From positions 248,001-312,000 of the IMG/VR virus record IMGVR_UViG_3300030385_002649: a stretch of 64,000 nucleotides of DNA. One strand, given 5' to 3'. A program made the position numbers and the translations under genes. Positions 5,960 through 22,346 of the stretch are shown here, in pieces (position 1 is the stretch's first letter; every line of letters starts with the position of its first letter). The notes under the pieces were generated by a model. That model was not told the origin of the DNA, ran no database searches, and saw nothing but the letters and a program-made list of their open reading frames with translations.

Positions 5960-6197
5960 ACACCTACTTTCCACTTTAAAGAAAGACTTCCCAGATGGCG
6001 AAGGCGGAGTGGACGTTCGGGTGGCCGCCAAAACAATTTTCGGGATTGTGGACGATTCTCGAATTAGATCTATGCAGTCGGTAGTAGATTTCCCGACGTG
6101 CAATATACACTCTTATTTGGTGTGGGATTATGTTGGTCTCCGACTCACGTCGGTATTTGAGAAAAATGGCCGAATCAATTGTCGAAGTAGCAGTTAA
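5928..6197 (+). CDS. hypothetical protein
   Basis: ORF within the operon. Confidence 0.5.
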   Translation: MTYLKPKLAAEHLLSTLKKDFPDGEGGVDVRVAAKTIFGIVDDSRIRSMQSVVDFPTCNIHSYLVWDYVGLRLTSVFEKNGRINCRSSS

Positions 6198-7695
6198 CCT
6201 TACTCAAGCCGAGCGAAAAGCCGCCGACGTTTCCTATCCAGGACCACAGGAGTTTGTGCACTTGCACAATCATACCCTGTTTAGTACACTAGACGGAATC
6301 GCAACGCCAGACGAATACTTCGGAGCGTGCGCCGAATTAGGTCACCCCGCTTTTTCTATTACCGACCACGGTAGCATGGCTGCGATTCCAGACGCCTATT
6401 GGGCCGCCAAAAAGCATAAGACCAAGTTCATTGCCGGGTGTGAGATCTACTTCAACGATTTTCACCAAGAACTTGAAGAGAAGCAAGCGAACCCAGACTG
6501 GAAGTTAGGAGCACTCAAAGCCCCTAAAGCTGCCACCTCTGTCGATTATGACATGATGGTAGGAAACGAAGAATGGGGCAAGTATAGGCGCAATCGACAT
6601 CTTACGGTTATGGCTATGAATATGGGAGGATATAGAAATCTCATCCACATGACTAGTGAAGCCTGGGAAATTGGTTTTTATTACAAACCAAGAGTCTGGT
6701 TCGACCAAATCAAGAAATATAACAAGGGCCTCATCATCTTGTCCGGATGCTTGAATGGTCCTGTTTGTCACGCTCTACGAGAAGCCGCAAAATGGGCTAA
6801 GATCTCTCGTGGCAAGCTTAAAGCTGATAAATTCGGAAGGCCAATCCACATCAACTCATACGACGCTAAAAAACGACAGCAGCATTATATGGACGAAGCT
6901 CACATGTGGGTCAAGAAATTTAGGGATCTCTTAGGAGACCGCTTCTATCTAGAATTGCAAATGCCGGGTAAGGAAATCCCGTTTGGCAAAGAAGCCTTCG
7001 CTCTGATCTGTCAAATGGCAAAGAAATATGACATCGATGCGGTCGTTGCTAACGATTGTCACTTCACTCACCGTGCTGATTTTAAAGTGCAAAAATGCAT
7101 GATGGCGGTGGGCCAGGGCGTCCAAATCGACGATCCGAACCTGTTCCACGTAGACTCCGACGAGCAATTTTTTAAGAGTAGAGCACAGTTGAGAAAAACA
7201 TTTTTCGAAGGAGGATATGACAAGTATATCACGCCCGAAGAGTTCGAACAATGCCTTCAAAACACAGTCGAGCTATCAAAGCGGTGTGAAACATTCGACC
7301 CCGACTTGAACCCGAAGCTCCCATCCATCCCAGATGCTGAACCTAAATTGAAGAAGCTAGTCATCGAGGCGTTAAAGAGCACTGGTTTGATGCATTCTGA
7401 TAAGAGATATATGGTCGATGGTAAAATGGTGACCCACAAAGAACAAGCCGCTATCGAATTGAAGCGTTATTGTGAAAAGGGCTTCGCTTCATACTTCTTG
7501 ATCATCAAGGATTTGATCGACTACTCTAAAACCAACCAATGGGACGTCGGACCTGGCCGTGGTAGCGCTGGAGGATCCTTAGTTTGTTATCTTCTTGGTA
7601 TTCATTCACTCGATCCTTTAAAGTGGGGTCTTAGTTCAGTTCGCTTTATGGGCGACAGCCGTGGTGGAGATATGCTCCGCGTATCTATGGATTAG
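6166..7695 (+). CDS. dnaE: DNA polymerase III alpha, N-terminal part (PHP domain plus start of palm)
   Basis: FVHLHNHT.FS.LDG, ITDHG, GCEIY, FYYKPR, LSGCLNG, NDCH, GPGRGSAGGSLVCYLLGI..DP; ends before PDIDIDF. ORF track start is 6130. Confidence 0.93.
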   Translation: MAESIVEVAVNLTQAERKAADVSYPGPQEFVHLHNHTLFSTLDGIATPDEYFGACAELGHPAFSITDHGSMAAIPDAYWAAKKHKTKFIAGCEIYFNDFHQELEEKQANPDWKLGALKAPKAATSVDYDMMVGNEEWGKYRRNRHLTVMAMNMGGYRNLIHMTSEAWEIGFYYKPRVWFDQIKKYNKGLIILSGCLNGPVCHALREAAKWAKISRGKLKADKFGRPIHINSYDAKKRQQHYMDEAHMWVKKFRDLLGDRFYLELQMPGKEIPFGKEAFALICQMAKKYDIDAVVANDCHFTHRADFKVQKCMMAVGQGVQIDDPNLFHVDSDEQFFKSRAQLRKTFFEGGYDKYITPEEFEQCLQNTVELSKRCETFDPDLNPKLPSIPDAEPKLKKLVIEALKSTGLMHSDKRYMVDGKMVTHKEQAAIELKRYCEKGFASYFLIIKDLIDYSKTNQWDVGPGRGSAGGSLVCYLLGIHSLDPLKWGLSSVRFMGDSRGGDMLRVSMD

Positions 7696-8154
7696 ATGAG
7701 CTATTCACGATTGTTGATAAAATTCCAAGAGGCTTTAGATTCTTACGCCTTATTGTCCCAATTTTCCGATCAGGATATGGAGAACCTTGGGTTTTCTGAT
7801 CAGATTAAGCTGGTCCTCTATAAATGGCCTGATATCGCTTCTTCTGCCCTCAACCTTATAATGCGCATGGAAGGGGAAGCGCATGAAGACGTTGTTTCCA
7901 ACGCTTGGCTTAGGTTGGAAAGGGATTTAGACGATACTATAGTACAGCCGGTCGCGGCGTTCTATGAGGGTTTAGCGGAAAAAACAAAACAAAGCATGGG
8001 AGGAGTTCCCATCAATGCAGTGATAAAACCGGAGGTTATACTTTCTTTAGATGCTATTAGCGCTAAGAAAGTTTATGTTGAATGTATTAACCATTTATTT
8101 GATGTTTTAGAAGCGGTAACTAAAACCAAATACCCAAGGATACAAACATCATGA
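7696..8154 (+). CDS. hypothetical protein
   Basis: ORF abutting the dnaE-N stop codon. Confidence 0.6.
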   Translation: MSYSRLLIKFQEALDSYALLSQFSDQDMENLGFSDQIKLVLYKWPDIASSALNLIMRMEGEAHEDVVSNAWLRLERDLDDTIVQPVAAFYEGLAEKTKQSMGGVPINAVIKPEVILSLDAISAKKVYVECINHLFDVLEAVTKTKYPRIQTS

Positions 8155-8546
8155 TCGAAATCGTTATAAATGGATACGGTAAAGTTTCCAAAAAAGCCAA
8201 TTTTGGTGTTTTGTTGAAGGATGATAGGGGCCAAACCCACCAAAGGATCGTCCCTTTGGAAGTGAAATCATCCTATGCGGCTGAGCTTCTAGGTATTAAG
8301 TATGGCTTGTTGACACTTCATGGCCGTGACTATGATATTCTTGTTAAGACCTCTTCCCCACACGTTTCTAAGTCGTTGACTAAGAAGGATGGGGAGTGGC
8401 CTAAGAGCAGGTCTAAGAGCATGGAGTTGTTGGACGAGATTAGAACTCTCGCTGAAGAGTTTGGAACTTTTGAGTGCGTTTTTGATAAGAGTAGTCCAGA
8501 GATGGATTACGTTAAAGAACTCGCTAGGAAACCAATTCGTTCTTAG
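8151..8546 (+). CDS. RNase HI-fold protein, probably inactive
   Basis: IVING..FGV..SSYAAELLG..ILVKTSS..W pattern follows RNase HI, but two catalytic Asp positions are N and S. Confidence 0.55.
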   Translation: MIEIVINGYGKVSKKANFGVLLKDDRGQTHQRIVPLEVKSSYAAELLGIKYGLLTLHGRDYDILVKTSSPHVSKSLTKKDGEWPKSRSKSMELLDEIRTLAEEFGTFECVFDKSSPEMDYVKELARKPIRS

Positions 8547-8558
8547 TATCTGAACCGT

Positions 8559-11500
8559 ATGGTTCATGTTAAAGATTGGGGCACGCTTAAGAAGCTGACC
8601 GCTAAATTGCTAGCGGTCAAGAAGCTGCGCGAGCCCTATATAAGCAAATTGAAGTTCGAGCTTAAAGAGATCGACAAGCAGGGCGCGAACCGCTACTGGC
8701 TAGATCTATTTAATAGCCGAGAAAAATTCAATCACAACAAAAACGGTCTAGTCTTGCCGTACATCTTGGGCTTAACGAAGATTGATCCAATCGACAGGGG
8801 TATTCCACACAAGGTCGAATACCATCCTGACTTCCCTGATATTGATATCGACTTCTTACCAGAAGCTAGAGAGCACGTCAAGAAGTATGCTAAAAAACAA
8901 TATGGCGACGATTTCGTTTGTACTGTTGGCATGTGGATTAGGTATAAGACCAAGTTGGCGCTCCAAGACGCCGCTACCGCGCTTGGCGTCAACCGTGGAG
9001 AAGTCATTGCGGTTTGTAAGCACCTTCCTGAAGAATTTGACACAATGCCTTTCGATCAAGCTTATGAAGAATTCGAGAATTTCAAGATCTTCGCTGATGA
9101 AAACCCAGAGCTTGTAAGACTAGCTTATGGCATGACTGGAAAGATTAAAGCTCAGAGTAAGCACGCTGGCGGATTGATCATTTCTAGCGTCCCGATTAGA
9201 GATCACGTCCCTCTGACTTATTCTGGCAAGAAAGGTGATAAACAGTGGACCTCCGAGTGGACTGAAGGCATGGCCGACTCTCAGTTGTCGAAGTTCGGTC
9301 TTGTAAAGTTCGACATTCTCGGGCTCATTAATATCGCTTATATTTGGAACTGCAAGAAGTTGGTCGCTAAAAACCACGGAGTGAAAATCGACTTCGAGGA
9401 TATCGATCCCGAAGATGACAGGGCGGGCTGGGCAGAATACGCTGATGGCCGAGTAGAAAAAATCCTGCTCAACGATCCTGATACGCTAGAGGCCGCTGAC
9501 AACCTAAAATTAGCTTCTATCTTCCAGTTCGACACTGATTTCCAACAGAGTGTTGTAGAAAAAGGTGGCGTCAGATCTTTCATGGACTTGGTAATCTATA
9601 CTAGTCTTGGTAGACCTGGTCCGCTTCCTATGATTGATGTCTATATTGGAAACCGAGACGACCAATTAGAAGGGTGGAACGACGTTTTACATCCTATCAT
9701 GAAGGATATCCTAAAAGAAACTAAGGGCGTACTAACATTCCAAGAACAGCTTCTTAGAACGTGGACCGAACTCTGTGGCTTCACAATGCCTGAAGCTGAG
9801 TCTGCGCAGAAGGCAGTTAAAAAGAAGAGGATCGAAATCCTGGATAAGATTGGTCCTAAGGTTATCGAGGGTGCAGCTGGGCTGATCGGCCAGGATGAGG
9901 CTGAAGCTCTCTGGGATAAGATGGTCAGCTTTGGTCGTTACTGCTTCAACAAATGTCTTGCTTCTGACACCATAATTATAGACCCGCTTACCAATGAGTC
10001 TATGACGATTGAAGAATTATATCAATCTAAAAAATCGTTTAATTTGTTATCGTATGATGGTAATAAACCTTTCATAGATGAAGTGGTTGATGTTTATTAT
10101 AATGGAAAACAAGAAGTTTTCGAAATAGAATTTAGCCATGGCATTAAACAAACGGTGACCATTGGTCATAAATTTATGAATGAATTTGGAGAGATGGAAG
10201 AAGTTTCTTCATTATTAGAGTCTGGTCATGCTATCAAATATATAAGAGATGGAGTGATTAATGTACAAGAAAGTAAACGATCAAATAGAACTGAAAATTG
10301 TCGAGCTTTATCAAAACAGGTTGACTTACAATCAAATTTTGAAAGAGATAGAAATAAAATTGAGCCATGGGACGATAACTCGAGTGATAAAAAAACACGG
10401 CGTGAAGAGGAAATTCTTAACCAAAGCATGCAACACAGTGGATCACCATTATTTCGAGAATATAAATTCTTCGGAGAAAGCCTATTGGTTGGGCATGTTG
10501 ATAGCAGATGGTTATATTCACGAGGCAAGAGGATATGTGAGCTTGCAACTTCATCACAAAGACCAAAGCTTAGTAAAGAAATTTGGAGAAGATTTGAAGT
10601 CGCCAAGAAAAATATTGACTTGTCGAAAAGGAGATTTTACACAAATGCGGAGTACGGTAAGCAGCAAGAAGATGATTGCGGATTTGAAACGTCTTGGTGT
10701 CATACAAGGGAAGTCTACCAAGGAAACTATTCCGGACGTTCCATTCATGTCACACCTATTAAGGGGGTTGATGGATGGGGACGGATGTATTGTGGTCAAT
10801 TCGAAAGGGTACCCAATGATAAGACTTGGGTCGAGTTTTGCTTGTTTAGAGAAAGTGAGAACCATTTTAGTTTCCGAATGTGGGGTGAGGGCTTCAAAGA
10901 TTACGGAATATCAAAACAATTTTTGTGCTATTTGCTGGACTGGTTTGTCTCAGACCCAGGCGATACTGAAGTTTTTGTATCAAGATGCCACAAGATTTCT
11001 GCTAAGGAAAAAGCAAATGGCCGATGCAATATTGTCAGCATTAGAAATCTCGGAGTTAAAAAGACTTATTCCCCAGAGATGACGTCCGATCATCATAATT
11101 ATCTTACAAAACCGCAGAATGGAGAAGTGGTTCATGCTAATAGCCACGCAGTCGCGTATATCATGGTCGCTTATAGGTGTTTGTGGTTGAAGACTTATTA
11201 TCCTGCTGAATGGTGGGCTTCAGTCTTGAGCCATTGCCCTGCCCACAAGTTCGTACGTTATATGGGCGCTGCAAGAACTGACAAAATCGCCTTTGGCACG
11301 CTAGACGTGGACAACCTGACCAAAGACTTCACAGTCCAAAAAGGGAGCATTATTCCTGGTCTATCGTCTATCAAAGGAATCGGAGACGAAACCGCCCAAA
11401 ACTTGGAGGACGAAAGTGCTAAAGGTACGTTCGAGGGGATTGAAGAGTTCATCGAACGGTGTGGCAAGAGTAAGGCTAACCTAGAGAGGCTGGTCAAGCT

Positions 11501-12344
11501 AGGCGCTTTCGACAACATCAACCCTAATAGGAAAGCTCTCTGGATGTGGTACCTATACAAATACGCCACTGGGAAAGAAATCACCGAGCTTAGAAGACAG
11601 ATTGATTATTGCTATACTTGGTCGCCCCTCGCCGTTCAAGAAGAACGGGATAGACAGAAGATTGAGTATAAGAGACAATATCAAAACAGAAAAATTCCTA
11701 AGCGAATCACAACTTGGATTCCGGCTGCCCCTTCTGTTACGCCGCGCGTGTTCAATCCTGATGTGGAGCTTACGAAAGAAGATATTCGGCTTGGCAAAAA
11801 GTTTAAGCTTGATTATGAACAAGTTGTCGCGTTGTTCCCAACGGATTTTAAGTTGGCAGAGCGGCTGGAAGCCGAGCACGATTACTTGGGCTTTTATTGG
11901 AGTTCTCCACTCGACATGTTTCAACACTCTGACAACACTACTATTGAATTCGCAAAGACTTGCGGACTTATTGAATGTGTTATCGAGGAGAAATTTGTTA
12001 GGCAGGGAACAAACGGAGAATATTGCATTCTAAACGTGAACGATGGTCAAGCGACTGCTCGTGTTAACGTTTGGGGCAATGAGGTGCACCTTAACGATCC
12101 TGAAGTTCTTCAGCCTGGAACAGGTGTCCAAATGGAGGTCATTTGGAAGGATCAATATAGGAGCTTTAGTTTGAAGGCACGGTCGATCATTATACCGTTG
12201 CCCTTCAAAGAAGAGGACGAAGACGACACATACTTTAAAGAGTTGTCTAAGGCCACCACTTCAGGTTCTGATGAACTTGACGAATTAAAAGAAATGTTGG
12301 AGAATATCGATGATCTTGAAAGAGATTTCAATGAAGCAGAGTGA
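8559..12344 (+). CDS. dnaE: DNA polymerase III alpha, C-terminal part (palm/fingers/HhH/OB) containing an intein
   Basis: PDIDIDF, KHAGG, LVKFDILGL, IFQF, RPGP, FQEQ, YCFNK|SHAVAY, GLSSIKGIG, E..YLGFY.S. Confidence 0.95.
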   Translation: MVHVKDWGTLKKLTAKLLAVKKLREPYISKLKFELKEIDKQGANRYWLDLFNSREKFNHNKNGLVLPYILGLTKIDPIDRGIPHKVEYHPDFPDIDIDFLPEAREHVKKYAKKQYGDDFVCTVGMWIRYKTKLALQDAATALGVNRGEVIAVCKHLPEEFDTMPFDQAYEEFENFKIFADENPELVRLAYGMTGKIKAQSKHAGGLIISSVPIRDHVPLTYSGKKGDKQWTSEWTEGMADSQLSKFGLVKFDILGLINIAYIWNCKKLVAKNHGVKIDFEDIDPEDDRAGWAEYADGRVEKILLNDPDTLEAADNLKLASIFQFDTDFQQSVVEKGGVRSFMDLVIYTSLGRPGPLPMIDVYIGNRDDQLEGWNDVLHPIMKDILKETKGVLTFQEQLLRTWTELCGFTMPEAESAQKAVKKKRIEILDKIGPKVIEGAAGLIGQDEAEALWDKMVSFGRYCFNKCLASDTIIIDPLTNESMTIEELYQSKKSFNLLSYDGNKPFIDEVVDVYYNGKQEVFEIEFSHGIKQTVTIGHKFMNEFGEMEEVSSLLESGHAIKYIRDGVINVQESKRSNRTENCRALSKQVDLQSNFERDRNKIEPWDDNSSDKKTRREEEILNQSMQHSGSPLFREYKFFGESLLVGHVDSRWLYSRGKRICELATSSQRPKLSKEIWRRFEVAKKNIDLSKRRFYTNAEYGKQQEDDCGFETSWCHTREVYQGNYSGRSIHVTPIKGVDGWGRMYCGQFERVPNDKTWVEFCLFRESENHFSFRMWGEGFKDYGISKQFLCYLLDWFVSDPGDTEVFVSRCHKISAKEKANGRCNIVSIRNLGVKKTYSPEMTSDHHNYLTKPQNGEVVHANSHAVAYIMVAYRCLWLKTYYPAEWWASVLSHCPAHKFVRYMGAARTDKIAFGTLDVDNLTKDFTVQKGSIIPGLSSIKGIGDETAQNLEDESAKGTFEGIEEFIERCGKSKANLERLVKLGAFDNINPNRKALWMWYLYKYATGKEITELRRQIDYCYTWSPLAVQEERDRQKIEYKRQYQNRKIPKRITTWIPAAPSVTPRVFNPDVELTKEDIRLGKKFKLDYEQVVALFPTDFKLAERLEAEHDYLGFYWSSPLDMFQHSDNTTIEFAKTCGLIECVIEEKFVRQGTNGEYCILNVNDGQATARVNVWGNEVHLNDPEVLQPGTGVQMEVIWKDQYRSFSLKARSIIIPLPFKEEDEDDTYFKELSKATTSGSDELDELKEMLENIDDLERDFNEAE
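9954..11141 (+). mobile_element. intein (396 aa) in DnaE at FNK|SHA
   Basis: Starts CLASDT (Cys1), block B T..H (VTIGHKF), block F IVSIRNLGVKKTY, ends VHAN before Ser+1. Removing it restores FNKSHAVAY. AT-richer than the exteins. Confidence 0.93.
10261..11082 (+). CDS. LAGLIDADG homing endonuclease with N-terminal HTH, in the +1 frame inside the intein
   Basis: AYWLGMLIADG and LLRGLMDGDG motifs; GGAG at 10251-54, 6 nt before the ATG; in-frame TGA at 10255-57. Confidence 0.9.
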   Translation: MYKKVNDQIELKIVELYQNRLTYNQILKEIEIKLSHGTITRVIKKHGVKRKFLTKACNTVDHHYFENINSSEKAYWLGMLIADGYIHEARGYVSLQLHHKDQSLVKKFGEDLKSPRKILTCRKGDFTQMRSTVSSKKMIADLKRLGVIQGKSTKETIPDVPFMSHLLRGLMDGDGCIVVNSKGYPMIRLGSSFACLEKVRTILVSECGVRASKITEYQNNFCAICWTGLSQTQAILKFLYQDATRFLLRKKQMADAILSALEISELKRLIPQR

Positions 12345-21200: not shown

Positions 21201-22346
21201 ATGTACTTTATCCACTGTGCCTTTGATCGTAAACGAGAATTACCTCTGTATGCAGTCGTTTTCGATTCAGAAGAAAAAGACATCGACTTCTACCCGCTAT
21301 ATCTCAAAAGTGGAAAGACTAAGCTATACGAGGTCGAACAAAACTTCAAAACGATTAAGGGCATACTGTGCGATTATAAAGTAGTTGTATCGGGATTTAA
21401 AGATTACGTCAAGTGCTTCAAGTTAAATCATTTAGAAAAGCATCAAGTCTACGACGCTCCCGGTCTTCCTATTAGGGGCGTAGCAGAAGTCGTTCCAATG
21501 AAGAAACTTCTGATCGAAGGGTTGAAGAAATTCTTAGGGTGTGAAGCTCTATTATGGAACAAAGTCTTAGCTGATTCGCAGTTCGTCTATTCTCATCTAG
21601 AAACTGCAGGATATTGGCAAGATAAAGCTCGCAATCCGACTTATGAATTCGCCTATACCGGACGATCTAAGAGTATAGGGGACAACATCCAGGGTGCAAG
21701 CACTGGCGCAGAGATTTATTCTAACAACGTTAGACACGACACTTTTGTATGCTTCGACTGGATAGCTGCTGACTTGCGGGCCGCCTCTATTCTAAGCCAA
21801 GACGTGCAGTTGAAAAACTCTTTCATAGAGTCGGATCCGTACACGCATCTCCAACAACAATTAGCATCAAGCGAAATCACTCGTGAGGATTGTAAGCTAG
21901 AACTGTTTAGAAGCTTTTACTCTATCAATTATGAAAATCCCATCCTAGAGATCTATCCCGATTTCGCTAAGTGGATGAAGGAGACTAGTGATAAAATTGA
22001 GGAACAAGGTTATAGTGAATCGATCCTCAATCGCAAGTTTACAATTGAAAAAGAGAGGACTAAAAAGAGTTGTTTCAACGCTCAGGTGCAGGGTTCAGTA
22101 GCTCACGCTATGCAAAACACAATTTATAGGGTTTTTAAGGCTTATCCACAGAACCTTATGGCTGAGATTCATGATTCTCTTGTTTTGTCATGTCCTGCTA
22201 AAGCTGTTGACGAGATTATTCAGACAGTTTCTAAAATCATGCTGAAGCCTTTTGAAGGTATCTTACAAAGTAGTCCAACATTTCCTATTAAAGTCTTAAA
22301 AGGCAAAAAATGGAAGATGTGGGAAGAAGTGGCAGAATTCAGATGA
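21201..22346 (+). CDS. short family A DNA polymerase (polymerase domain only)
   Basis: YTGRS, motif A FDWIAADLR, motif B REDCK...F..FY, FNAQVQGS.AH, motif C IHDS. Confidence 0.8.
   Translation: MYFIHCAFDRKRELPLYAVVFDSEEKDIDFYPLYLKSGKTKLYEVEQNFKTIKGILCDYKVVVSGFKDYVKCFKLNHLEKHQVYDAPGLPIRGVAEVVPMKKLLIEGLKKFLGCEALLWNKVLADSQFVYSHLETAGYWQDKARNPTYEFAYTGRSKSIGDNIQGASTGAEIYSNNVRHDTFVCFDWIAADLRAASILSQDVQLKNSFIESDPYTHLQQQLASSEITREDCKLELFRSFYSINYENPILEIYPDFAKWMKETSDKIEEQGYSESILNRKFTIEKERTKKSCFNAQVQGSVAHAMQNTIYRVFKAYPQNLMAEIHDSLVLSCPAKAVDEIIQTVSKIMLKPFEGILQSSPTFPIKVLKGKKWKMWEEVAEFR

What the first reader, a model, noticed from the sequence alone, without database searches (positions are those of the whole stretch)
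6166..12344. DnaE split into two genes by partial duplication, with complementary motifs
Seen: the N-gene has PHP plus EL.....GF.SYFL...GPGRGSAGGSLVCYLLGI..DP and stops just before the catalytic PDIDIDF. The C-gene begins with a decayed second copy of that segment (KLKFELKEIDKQGANRYWL...HNKNGLVLPYILGLTKIDP), lacks RGS, and carries PDIDIDF. There are no split-intein halves at the termini, each gene has its own GTATYT motif, and two genes lie between them. Known: the palm RGS motif and the DID aspartates both contribute to the C-family active site. Inference: a non-covalent heterodimeric replicase, or a separate PHP proofreading subunit.
Basis: partly seen in the sequence, partly recalled or inferred. 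Interest (0 to 1): 0.7.

Follow-up and report, generated by a model that had tools for sequence, protein, structure and literature searches.

The report
Two-gene DnaE replicase in jumbo phage
A 370-kb marine phage, and over a hundred uncultured relatives, encode their bacterial-type replicative DNA polymerase as two separate proteins cut through the catalytic core, so the active site probably forms only when the two proteins bind each other.

Summary
The N gene (6166-7695) encodes an intact PHP domain plus the first part of the palm, with an invariant RGS loop. It stops at the position matching E. coli alpha residue ~395.

The C gene (8559-12344) matches alpha from residue ~396 onward: PDIDIDF, the third Asp, thumb, fingers, HhH and OB. 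Its first 87 residues are a degenerate second copy of the N tail. An 11-residue deletion has removed strand 1 and the GS loop in all 102 relatives examined.

The order N, X, Y, C is kept on every one of eight related contigs with enough flank, down to 39% C identity. X is an unknown helical protein and Y an RNase-H-fold protein lacking two catalytic Asp. N and C co-diverge.

No intron, split intein or assembly joint was found. A complex model places the N RGS loop and tail on the C catalytic strands (ipSAE 0.84, best control 0.00).

Best reading: a non-covalent two-subunit replicase with a composite active site. The closest precedent is the split minimal Pol III of group 2.2 jumbo phages, so this is a new variant of a known kind.

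The parts
6166..7695 (+). N subunit gene (509 aa): PHP domain plus the N-terminal (NTP-binding) part of the palm.
   Evidence: Pfam PHP E 2.5e-37 and PF07733 profile 14-98. AF2 model pLDDT 88 aligns to E. coli alpha residues 1-394, Z 32-34. All nine PHP metal ligands are present and conserved. Homologues begin at the equivalent of ATG 6166.
7378..7692 (+). N tail (residues 405-509): canonical helix, strand 1, RGS loop (R465-G466-S467 at nt 7558-7566) and helical insert, ending in the family-specific SRGGxML...M(D/E) tail.
   Evidence: hhalign against canonical DnaE gives E 9e-45 and 46% identity. P463, R465, G466, S467, G470, S471, R493, F494, R499, G500 and G501 are invariant in 19 of 19 sequences. 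The last 12 residues have pLDDT below 50 in the N-only model but all lie in the predicted interface.
7696..8154 (+). Gene X (152 aa): conserved small protein of unknown function. Its ATG directly follows the N stop codon.
   Evidence: No Pfam or PHROG match. Syntenic homologues with a KWPD motif occur in seven related loci. The Atlas gives only weak helical-bundle look-alikes.
8151..8546 (+). Gene Y (131 aa): RNase HI fold without the full catalytic set. Its start overlaps the X stop (ATGA).
   Evidence: RVT_3 E 8e-4 and PHROG RNase H E 0.004. Atlas structure TM 0.85 to RNase H families. In the alignment of eight homologues only G8, E45 and R98 are invariant, and the first and third catalytic Asp positions are not Asp.
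8559..12344 (+). C subunit gene (1261 aa precursor, 865 aa after intein removal): catalytic carboxylates, thumb, fingers, HhH and OB.
   Evidence: PF07733 profile 16-260, PF17657 and PF14579. The AF2 model of the intein-less homologue P0001 has pLDDT 91. Its residues 86-822 align to E. coli or Taq alpha from residue 396-400 onward, Z 20-23, and residues 728-822 align to OB folds.
8559..8819 (+). C head (residues 1-87): degenerate second copy of the N tail, lacking strand 1 and the GS loop.
   Evidence: hhalign against the N tail gives E 1.7e-8 and against canonical DnaE E 6e-16, with an 11-residue deletion. None of 102 family members has RGS there and loop length is fixed. Own invariant residues are E34, I38, Q41, N60 and P77.
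8835..8855 (+). PDIDIDF (P93-F99): strand 2 with the two catalytic aspartates D96 and D98.
   Evidence: P93, D94, D96 and D98 are invariant in 65 and 102 sequences. Residues 84-100 contact N in the complex model.
9312..9314 (+). D252, the third catalytic aspartate (KFD motif).
   Evidence: K250 and D252 are invariant. They align with the K553/D555 region of E. coli alpha; that residue mapping is from established knowledge. Residues 245-253 lie in the predicted interface.
9954..11141 (+). Intein (C residues 466-861) inserted at CFNK|S.
   Evidence: The intein-less homologues L007 and L003 read straight through CFNKSHA. It has an N-terminal Cys, a TxxH block and a terminal Asn followed by Ser. 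A homologous intein sits at the same site in L004.
10261..11082 (+). LAGLIDADG homing endonuclease ORF (273 aa) in the +1 frame relative to the intein.
   Evidence: PF14528 E 1.3e-7 and phrog_4645 endonuclease E 8e-51. The host frame has 0 stops in 274 codons, against 16.9 +/- 2.8 (minimum 7) in 2000 synonymous shuffles; L004 shows the same. The HE is 53% identical between the window and L004, with nucleotide differences of 107/68/160 at codon positions 1/2/3, while the host-frame peptide is only 29% identical.

Best explanation
The phage's C-family (DnaE-type) replicative polymerase is made as two polypeptides that assemble non-covalently.

The N subunit provides an intact PHP exonuclease domain and the NTP-binding half of the nucleotidyltransferase palm: the helix, strand 1, the RGS loop and the C-family helical insert.

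The C subunit provides strand 2 with the DxD aspartates, the third aspartate, thumb, fingers, HhH and OB domains.

The cut falls immediately before strand 2. The palm beta-sheet and the dNTP-binding/catalytic site are therefore inferred to be intermolecular.

The first 87 residues of C are an old, degenerate duplicate of the N tail that has lost exactly strand 1 and the GS loop. This points to origin by duplication followed by complementary loss. The duplicate is now conserved in its own right, most likely as a packing or docking element against N.

The four abutting genes N-X-Y-C form one conserved module inside a replication gene cluster.

Shown: gene structure, homology, conservation, co-divergence, and the absence of recognisable splicing elements. 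Inferred: binding, the composite active site, and the role of the C head.
For: Complementary halves:
- N aligns to E. coli alpha 1-394 and C (from residue 86-93) to alpha 396-400 onward.
- RGS is invariant in N-type proteins (19 of 19) and absent from all 102 C-type heads.
- DxD and the third Asp are invariant in C.

Duplication: N tail and C head are homologous (E 1.7e-8). The C head matches canonical DnaE with an 11-residue deletion over the GS loop.

Conservation:
- The N-X-Y-C order is conserved on every one of eight related contigs with enough flank, down to 39% C identity.
- More than 100 PHP-less C-type proteins and about 25 N-type clusters at 50% identity exist.
- N and C pairwise identities correlate, r 0.87, Mantel 5 of 5000.

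Complex model: ipSAE 0.84 against a best control of 0.00. That mark was reached by 58 of 80 solved complexes and 2 of 110 mismatched pairs. Runs agree on at least 95% of contacts and partner pLDDT is 80. N 459-468 and 492-509 touch C 84-100 and 245-253. The N tail is disordered when modelled alone.

Context:
- No family B polymerase in the genome, and only a truncated PolA-like ORF.
- The neighbours are RecA, a DnaB-like helicase, a gp32-like SSB and a FEN.

Fold background: in the NT fold the GS/GG motif between strands 1 and 2 is universal, and C-family enzymes carry a ~40-residue insert between GS and strand 2 (PMC11646218). That insert is a plausible permissive cut site.
Against: - There is no biochemical or transcript evidence; no RNA run was listed.
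- The complex score may reflect the model's memory of solved single-chain DnaE structures, so it shows likeness rather than binding.
- The C-only model folds its head confidently (pLDDT 85-94). One PDB alignment superposes head residue 36 onward on alpha 327 onward. The head might therefore occupy the canonical position itself, leaving the N tail elsewhere.
- Both copies cannot occupy the same place, and no coordinates were available to see how the model resolves this.
- The roles of X and Y are unknown.
Confidence: 0.68

Rival explanations
1. C is an autonomous polymerase whose own degenerate head fills the canonical palm position, with a GS-less triphosphate site. N is a separate PHP proofreading exonuclease or pyrophosphatase subunit that merely docks, and its RGS segment is kept for folding or docking only.
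For: The C-only model is confident through the head, and one structural alignment places the head at the canonical position. The head has its own invariant residues, N60 and the NG pair. N has a complete PHP metal site.
Against: The GS/GG loop is universal in NT-fold enzymes (PMC11646218), and the C head has lost it together with strand 1 in all 102 members. N keeps RGS, RF and R499 at 100% invariance, which is more constraint than a docking role would suggest. The complex model puts the N RGS loop and tail on the catalytic strands.
Confidence: 0.2
2. The two halves are rejoined by splicing, either a group I/II intron covering 7696-8558 or protein trans-splicing, to give one canonical DnaE.
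For: dnaE is a known target of mobile elements at this very spot. Bacillus phage vB_BceM_WH1 has a group I intron right after PDVDTD, and cyanobacteria use split inteins. This C gene also carries an intein.
Against: - No Rfam match in 7400-9000 even at E<=1.
- The intervening DNA encodes two conserved, tightly abutting genes.
- Joining would duplicate about 85 residues.
- N has a conserved stop position and a family-specific tail, and C a conserved start and head.
- There are no Hint/intein domains at the termini.
Confidence: 0.03
3. The split is an assembly error or a decaying pseudogene.
For: One relative (L008) does have a broken C gene, with an in-frame TGA inside PDIDIDF and a ~300-nt insertion.
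Against: Two assemblies reproduce the stretch exactly at 53x and 257x, though they come from one sample that may be the record's own source. The independent evidence is that the same split is present in diverged relatives with strong purifying selection on both halves.
Confidence: 0.01

Closest known systems
Split minimal DNA polymerase III alpha of group 2.2 jumbo phages (Iyer, Anantharaman, Krishnan, Burroughs & Aravind 2021, Viruses 13:63; PMC7824862)
   Same: [quoted passage not shown] The authors proposed that the two reconstitute one enzyme. The cut falls at the same conceptual boundary.
   Different: That version is minimal, with no PHP or other Pol III domains. It is encoded by distant genes and accompanies a family B replicase. 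Here the enzyme is full-size (PHP through OB), the genes lie in one four-gene module, the genome has no PolB, and the C subunit keeps a degenerate duplicate of the N subdomain. Sequence relatedness to that family was not tested.
Cyanobacterial split DnaE joined by a split intein
   Same: dnaE is encoded as two genes. The window's own cis-intein sits four residues from the cyanobacterial split-intein site (CFNK).
   Different: There the halves are ligated covalently by IntN/IntC and the cut lies in the fingers region. Here there are no intein halves at the termini, the cut is in the palm, and the two genes overlap by duplication.
Group I intron-interrupted dnaE of Bacillus phages (for example vB_BceM_WH1)
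   Same: The interruption is at the catalytic DxD strand.
   Different: That interruption is removed at the RNA level. In the window no intron is detectable, and the spacer encodes conserved proteins.
Genes-in-pieces enzymes of T4-like phages (Aeh1 NrdA split by mobE; split gp43 PolB) and the split PolB of Methanothermobacter (from general knowledge, not checked here)
   Same: An essential replication enzyme works as non-covalently assembled fragments.
   Different: Those are different enzyme families. The phage cases are usually caused by a free-standing homing endonuclease gene lying between the halves. X and Y are not endonucleases, and the split here is old and widespread.
Inteins with out-of-frame or antisense homing endonucleases (Gosselin, Arsenault & Gogarten, bioRxiv 10.1101/2025.01.02.630785)
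   Same: This applies to the side finding. The endonuclease is encoded in another frame of the intein's central region while the intein frame stays open.
   Different: The reported cases are antisense LAGLIDADG or VSR-like and sense-strand frame-3 EndoVII-like endonucleases in actinophages. Here it is a sense-strand +1 LAGLIDADG in a dnaE intein of marine jumbo phages.

Membership tests
C-family DNA polymerase, DnaE type | N-terminal PHP domain with the nine metal ligands | tested here: met
   Pfam PHP E 2.5e-37. H32, H34, D43, H68, E93, H145, C195, D297 and H299 are present and conserved in N-type proteins.
C-family DNA polymerase, DnaE type | Pol-beta-like NT palm with a GS motif plus three carboxylates | tested here: met
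   All elements are present, but they are divided between proteins: RGS on N only, and D96, D98 and D252 on C only.
C-family DNA polymerase, DnaE type | Fingers, HhH and C-terminal OB domains | tested here: met
   PF17657 and PF14579. Model residues 728-822 align to OB folds with Z of about 10.
C-family DNA polymerase, DnaE type | Catalytic core on a single polypeptide | tested here: not met
   There are two genes with two others between them, conserved in all relatives examined.
Split-intein DnaE | IntN at the C-terminus of the first fragment and IntC at the N-terminus of the second | tested here: not met
   There is no intein or Hint match at either terminus. N ends in the conserved ...SRGGxMLxxxM(D/E) tail and C begins with a palm-like head.
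Intron-interrupted dnaE | Group I or II intron RNA between the exons | tested here: not met
   Rfam at the gathering threshold on the window and at E<=1 on 7400-9000 gives no match. The positive control in L012 gives two group I hits. Unknown intron classes cannot be excluded by Rfam.
Split minimal Pol III alpha (Iyer et al. 2021) | Split between the NTP-binding and Mg2+-binding subdomains | tested here: met
   The cut lies between the GS loop and strand 2.
Split minimal Pol III alpha (Iyer et al. 2021) | Minimal module without PHP or other domains, distant genes, co-occurring PolB | tested here: not met
   PHP, fingers, HhH and OB are all present. The two genes are 863 nt apart. The genome has no PF00136 match.
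Homing-endonuclease 'genes in pieces' | A free-standing homing endonuclease gene between the halves | tested here: not met
   X has no family match. Y has an RNase H fold without a full catalytic set.
Intein with out-of-frame homing endonuclease (side finding) | Splicing blocks in the host frame, endonuclease in another frame, host frame kept open | tested here: met
   Cys1, TxxH and terminal Asn followed by Ser are in frame 0. LAGLIDADG is in frame +1. There are 0 stops against 16.9 expected, replicated in L004.

The most novel reading that the evidence does not exclude
N-X-Y-C encodes a four-subunit replicase core. The palm beta-sheet is intermolecular, with strand 1 and the GS loop from N and strands 2 onward from C. 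The duplicated, GS-less head of C serves as the pseudo-symmetric docking handle for the N tail. The inactivated RNase-H-fold protein Y and the helical protein X are obligate accessory subunits. This would make polymerase activity conditional on assembly, a regulatory or anti-host design not known for any cellular C-family enzyme.
Probability: 0.3. Interest if true: 0.75.

Novelty: new variant of a known kind. Interest (0 to 1): 0.6.

Why it matters
Replicative polymerases almost always keep their catalytic core on one chain. This is a natural, widespread and evolutionarily stable case in which a full-size C-family replicase is cut through the nucleotidyltransferase fold itself.

If the composite site is confirmed, three things follow:
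- It gives a natural two-piece system for asking what the GS loop and the PHP domain each contribute to synthesis and proofreading.
- It is a worked example of gene fission by duplication and complementary loss in an essential enzyme.
- It provides a sequence marker for a large, so far uncultured clade of jumbo phages: a C-type protein without PHP, and an N-type protein ending SRGGxML.

It also warns annotators that PHP-less 'DNA polymerase III alpha' calls of about 820 residues are one half of an enzyme rather than fragments.

Tried and rejected
- Near-identical DNA search in GenBank phages found nothing. tblastn with the C head alone also found nothing, so no cultured relative was found.
- The best phage-database protein hits were about 30% identical canonical DnaEs. 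Gordonia phage IDyn and a gut 'Bacteriophage sp.' scaffold turned out to be full-length single genes.
- PHROG families of about 460 and 780-820 positions matched the halves. Their membership could not be inspected, and the one cultured case checked, Bacillus phage WH1, is intron-split rather than gene-split.
- For RNA evidence, no run was listed.
- The intein of P0003 sits at another site and is unrelated, so it could not show how the +1 frame arose.
- Gene X yielded no function from Pfam, PHROGs or the Atlas.
- Coordinates of the complex model were not available, so the relative placement of the N tail and C head could not be read out.
- The A3 alignment used for the complex included the first 8 intein residues by mistake (473 instead of 465 residues). 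This is unlikely to matter.
- One literature search call failed on a syntax slip.
Full report
**What is there.** The window is bases 248001-312000 of a 370,804-bp virus record with direct terminal repeats, that is, a jumbo phage. The source sample is a marine metagenome.

Four genes abut on the + strand:
- N, 6166-7695
- X, 7696-8154
- Y, 8151-8546
- C, 8559-12344

The N stop codon is followed directly by the X start. The X stop overlaps the Y start (ATGA). Twelve bases separate Y from C.

Pfam finds PHP plus PF07733 profile positions 14-98 in N. In C it finds PF07733 positions 16-260, the finger domain and HHH_6.

**Is it real?** Logan contigs from two runs of one marine sample reproduce 6100-12000 without a single difference or joint, at word depths 53 and 257. 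That sample may be the record's own source, so this is not independent support.

The stronger evidence is that the same architecture recurs in diverged relatives. L007 and L003 have N, X, Y and an intein-less C of 822-827 aa. L004 has the same with one extra ORF and an intein-bearing C. Four more contigs of 48-395 kb have C proteins only 39-47% identical to the L007 C protein used as query.

A word-index search with the intein-less C protein listed 120 best hits. All lack PHP, and the 102 intein-free ones taken for alignment are 787-895 residues long. An exhaustive search with N found about 25 clusters at 50% identity whose match runs to the protein's own C-terminus, before ordinary 1100-1200-residue DnaEs appear at 33-38% identity. 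These N-type proteins end in a shared ...RF(L/M)SxSRGGxMLxxxM(D/E) tail.

Pairwise identities of N and C from the same seven contigs correlate (r 0.87, Mantel 5 of 5000). The halves are therefore co-inherited and similarly constrained.

**Anatomy of the cut.** The AF2 model of N (pLDDT 88) superposes on E. coli alpha residues 1-394. The model of an intein-less C (pLDDT 91) superposes from its residue 86-93 on alpha residues 396-400 and onward through the OB domain. N plus C(88-end) is therefore one complete DnaE, cut just before the strand that carries D401/D403.

The N tail is a well-kept canonical segment (hhalign E 9e-45, 46% identity to full-length DnaEs). R465-G466-S467 and several other residues are invariant.

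The first 87 residues of C are extra. They are homologous to the same segment (E 1.7e-8 against the N tail, E 6e-16 against canonical DnaE). They carry an 11-residue deletion that removes the strand-1/GS loop. None of 102 C-type proteins has RGS there, and loop length is fixed.

Yet the head has invariant residues of its own (E34, I38, Q41, N60, P77), so it is functional, not decaying. C carries the invariant P93-D94-x-D96-x-D98 and K250/D252. N carries all nine PHP metal ligands.

**How it most likely works.** In NT-fold enzymes the GS/GG motif between strands 1 and 2 is universal. C-family polymerases have a ~40-residue helical insert between GS and strand 2 (PMC11646218). The cut lies at the end of that insert.

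A complex model of N with C residues 1-473 scored ipSAE 0.84 against a best control of 0.00. That mark was reached by 58 of 80 solved complexes and 2 of 110 mismatched pairs. The runs agree on at least 95% of contacts and partner pLDDT is 80. In the model, N 459-468 (the GPGRGS loop) and N 492-509 touch C 84-100 and 245-253, the two catalytic strands. N 492-509 is the tail, whose last 12 residues are disordered in the N-only model.

I therefore read the system as a non-covalent two-subunit replicase whose palm sheet and dNTP site are assembled from both chains, with the PHP proofreader on the N chain. The caveat is that solved DnaE structures may drive this score. It shows that the pieces fit like a DnaE, not that they bind.

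Where the C head sits in the complex could not be read, because no coordinates were available. The main rival, which I put at 0.2, is that the head fills the canonical place and C works alone.

**Context.** The genome has no family B polymerase, and only a 381-residue PolA-like ORF covering a third of the PolA profile. The module lies next to RecA, a DnaB-like helicase, a gp32-like SSB and a FEN. This fits a replicative role.

Y has an RNase HI fold (TM 0.85) but lacks two of the catalytic Asp in all eight homologues. X is an unassigned helical protein. Their strict synteny suggests accessory subunits, but nothing tests that.

**Splicing excluded as far as tools allow.** Rfam finds nothing in the window at gathering thresholds, and nothing in 7400-9000 at E<=1. 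The same scan detects two group I introns in the dnaE of Bacillus phage vB_BceM_WH1, one of them right after PDVDTD. Neither terminus has an intein half.

**Comparison with what is known.** Iyer et al. 2021 (PMC7824862) reported a split minimal Pol III alpha module in group 2.2 jumbo phages. It is divided into NTP-binding and Mg2+/template-binding proteins, encoded by distant genes, alongside a PolB.

The present case shares that boundary but differs in four ways. It is full-size with PHP. It sits in a single module. It appears to be the only replicase in the genome. It retains a degenerate duplicate.

Full-text searches found no description of this architecture. I rate it a new variant of a known kind.

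**Side finding.** The C gene holds a 396-residue intein at CFNK|S (nt 9954-11141). Its LAGLIDADG endonuclease (10261-11082) is read in the +1 frame.

The intein frame has no stop in 274 overlapping codons. That compares with 16.9 +/- 2.8 (minimum 7) in 2000 synonymous shuffles, and L004 shows the same pattern. Substitutions follow the endonuclease frame, at 107/68/160 for codon positions 1/2/3. The endonuclease is 53% identical between the window and L004, against 29% for the host-frame peptide.

Out-of-frame and antisense intein endonucleases were recently described in actinophages. A sense-strand +1 LAGLIDADG is not among the listed types.

**GTATYT.** The motif occurs at chance frequency overall. 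However, 7 of its 64 copies sit 13-15 nt upstream of an ATG that opens a long ORF, including N, X, C and the DnaB-like gene. It may be a start-associated element. This was not pursued.

Noticed in passing
window 9954-11141 (intein) and 10261-11082 (HE ORF); L004 12208-13032: The dnaE intein encodes its LAGLIDADG homing endonuclease in the +1 frame. The intein frame is kept stop-free over 274 codons (0 stops against 16.9 expected), and this is replicated in a relative whose endonuclease is 53% identical. It is a dual-coding region of a recently described kind, but this particular type is not among those listed.
   Followed up: yes
L008 4716-5420 and 901-2859: In one relative the C gene is broken. 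About 300 nt with stops in all frames follow the head, and a 6-nt TGAATT insertion puts a stop inside PDIDIDF; removing those 6 nt would restore the motif. Its N gene also carries an intein inside the PHP D-x-H motif. It could be a pseudogene, an unrecognised intervening element or a short translational hop. This was not resolved.
   Followed up: partly
window 8151-8546: Gene Y has an RNase HI fold but lacks the first and third catalytic aspartates in all eight homologues. It is strictly syntenic between the two polymerase halves.
   Followed up: partly
window 21201-22346: A 381-residue ORF matches only positions 246-360 of the 381-position family A polymerase profile. It is a truncated PolA-like protein in the same replication cluster.
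   Followed up: no
window 6153, 7681, 8546, 18993, 37283 (+ strand); 44847, 1703 (- strand): GTATYT lies 13-15 nt upstream of the ATG of seven long ORFs, although its total count in the window is at chance level. It may be a start-associated signal in a genome without obvious Shine-Dalgarno sequences before these genes.
   Followed up: partly
L012 6205-6818 and 7903-8227 (Bacillus phage vB_BceM_WH1): The dnaE of this cultured phage is annotated as three 'DNA polymerase III alpha' genes. Two group I intron matches (below the gathering score, E 1e-4 and 8e-6) fill the gaps, the first directly after the catalytic PDVDTD.
   Followed up: partly
proteins P0121, P0126, P0128, P0130, P0131, P0133: Many N-type proteins are 811-1245 residues long with the match split into stretches. 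Inteins therefore appear to be frequent in the N subunit as well.
   Followed up: no
proteins P0037 and P0080: Some C-type proteins are filed in NCBI under archaeal MAGs (Nitrosocaldus, Kariarchaeaceae). Their contigs carry the phage-like N-X-Y-C, UDG and RecA synteny. This suggests mis-binned viral contigs or viruses of archaea.
   Followed up: no
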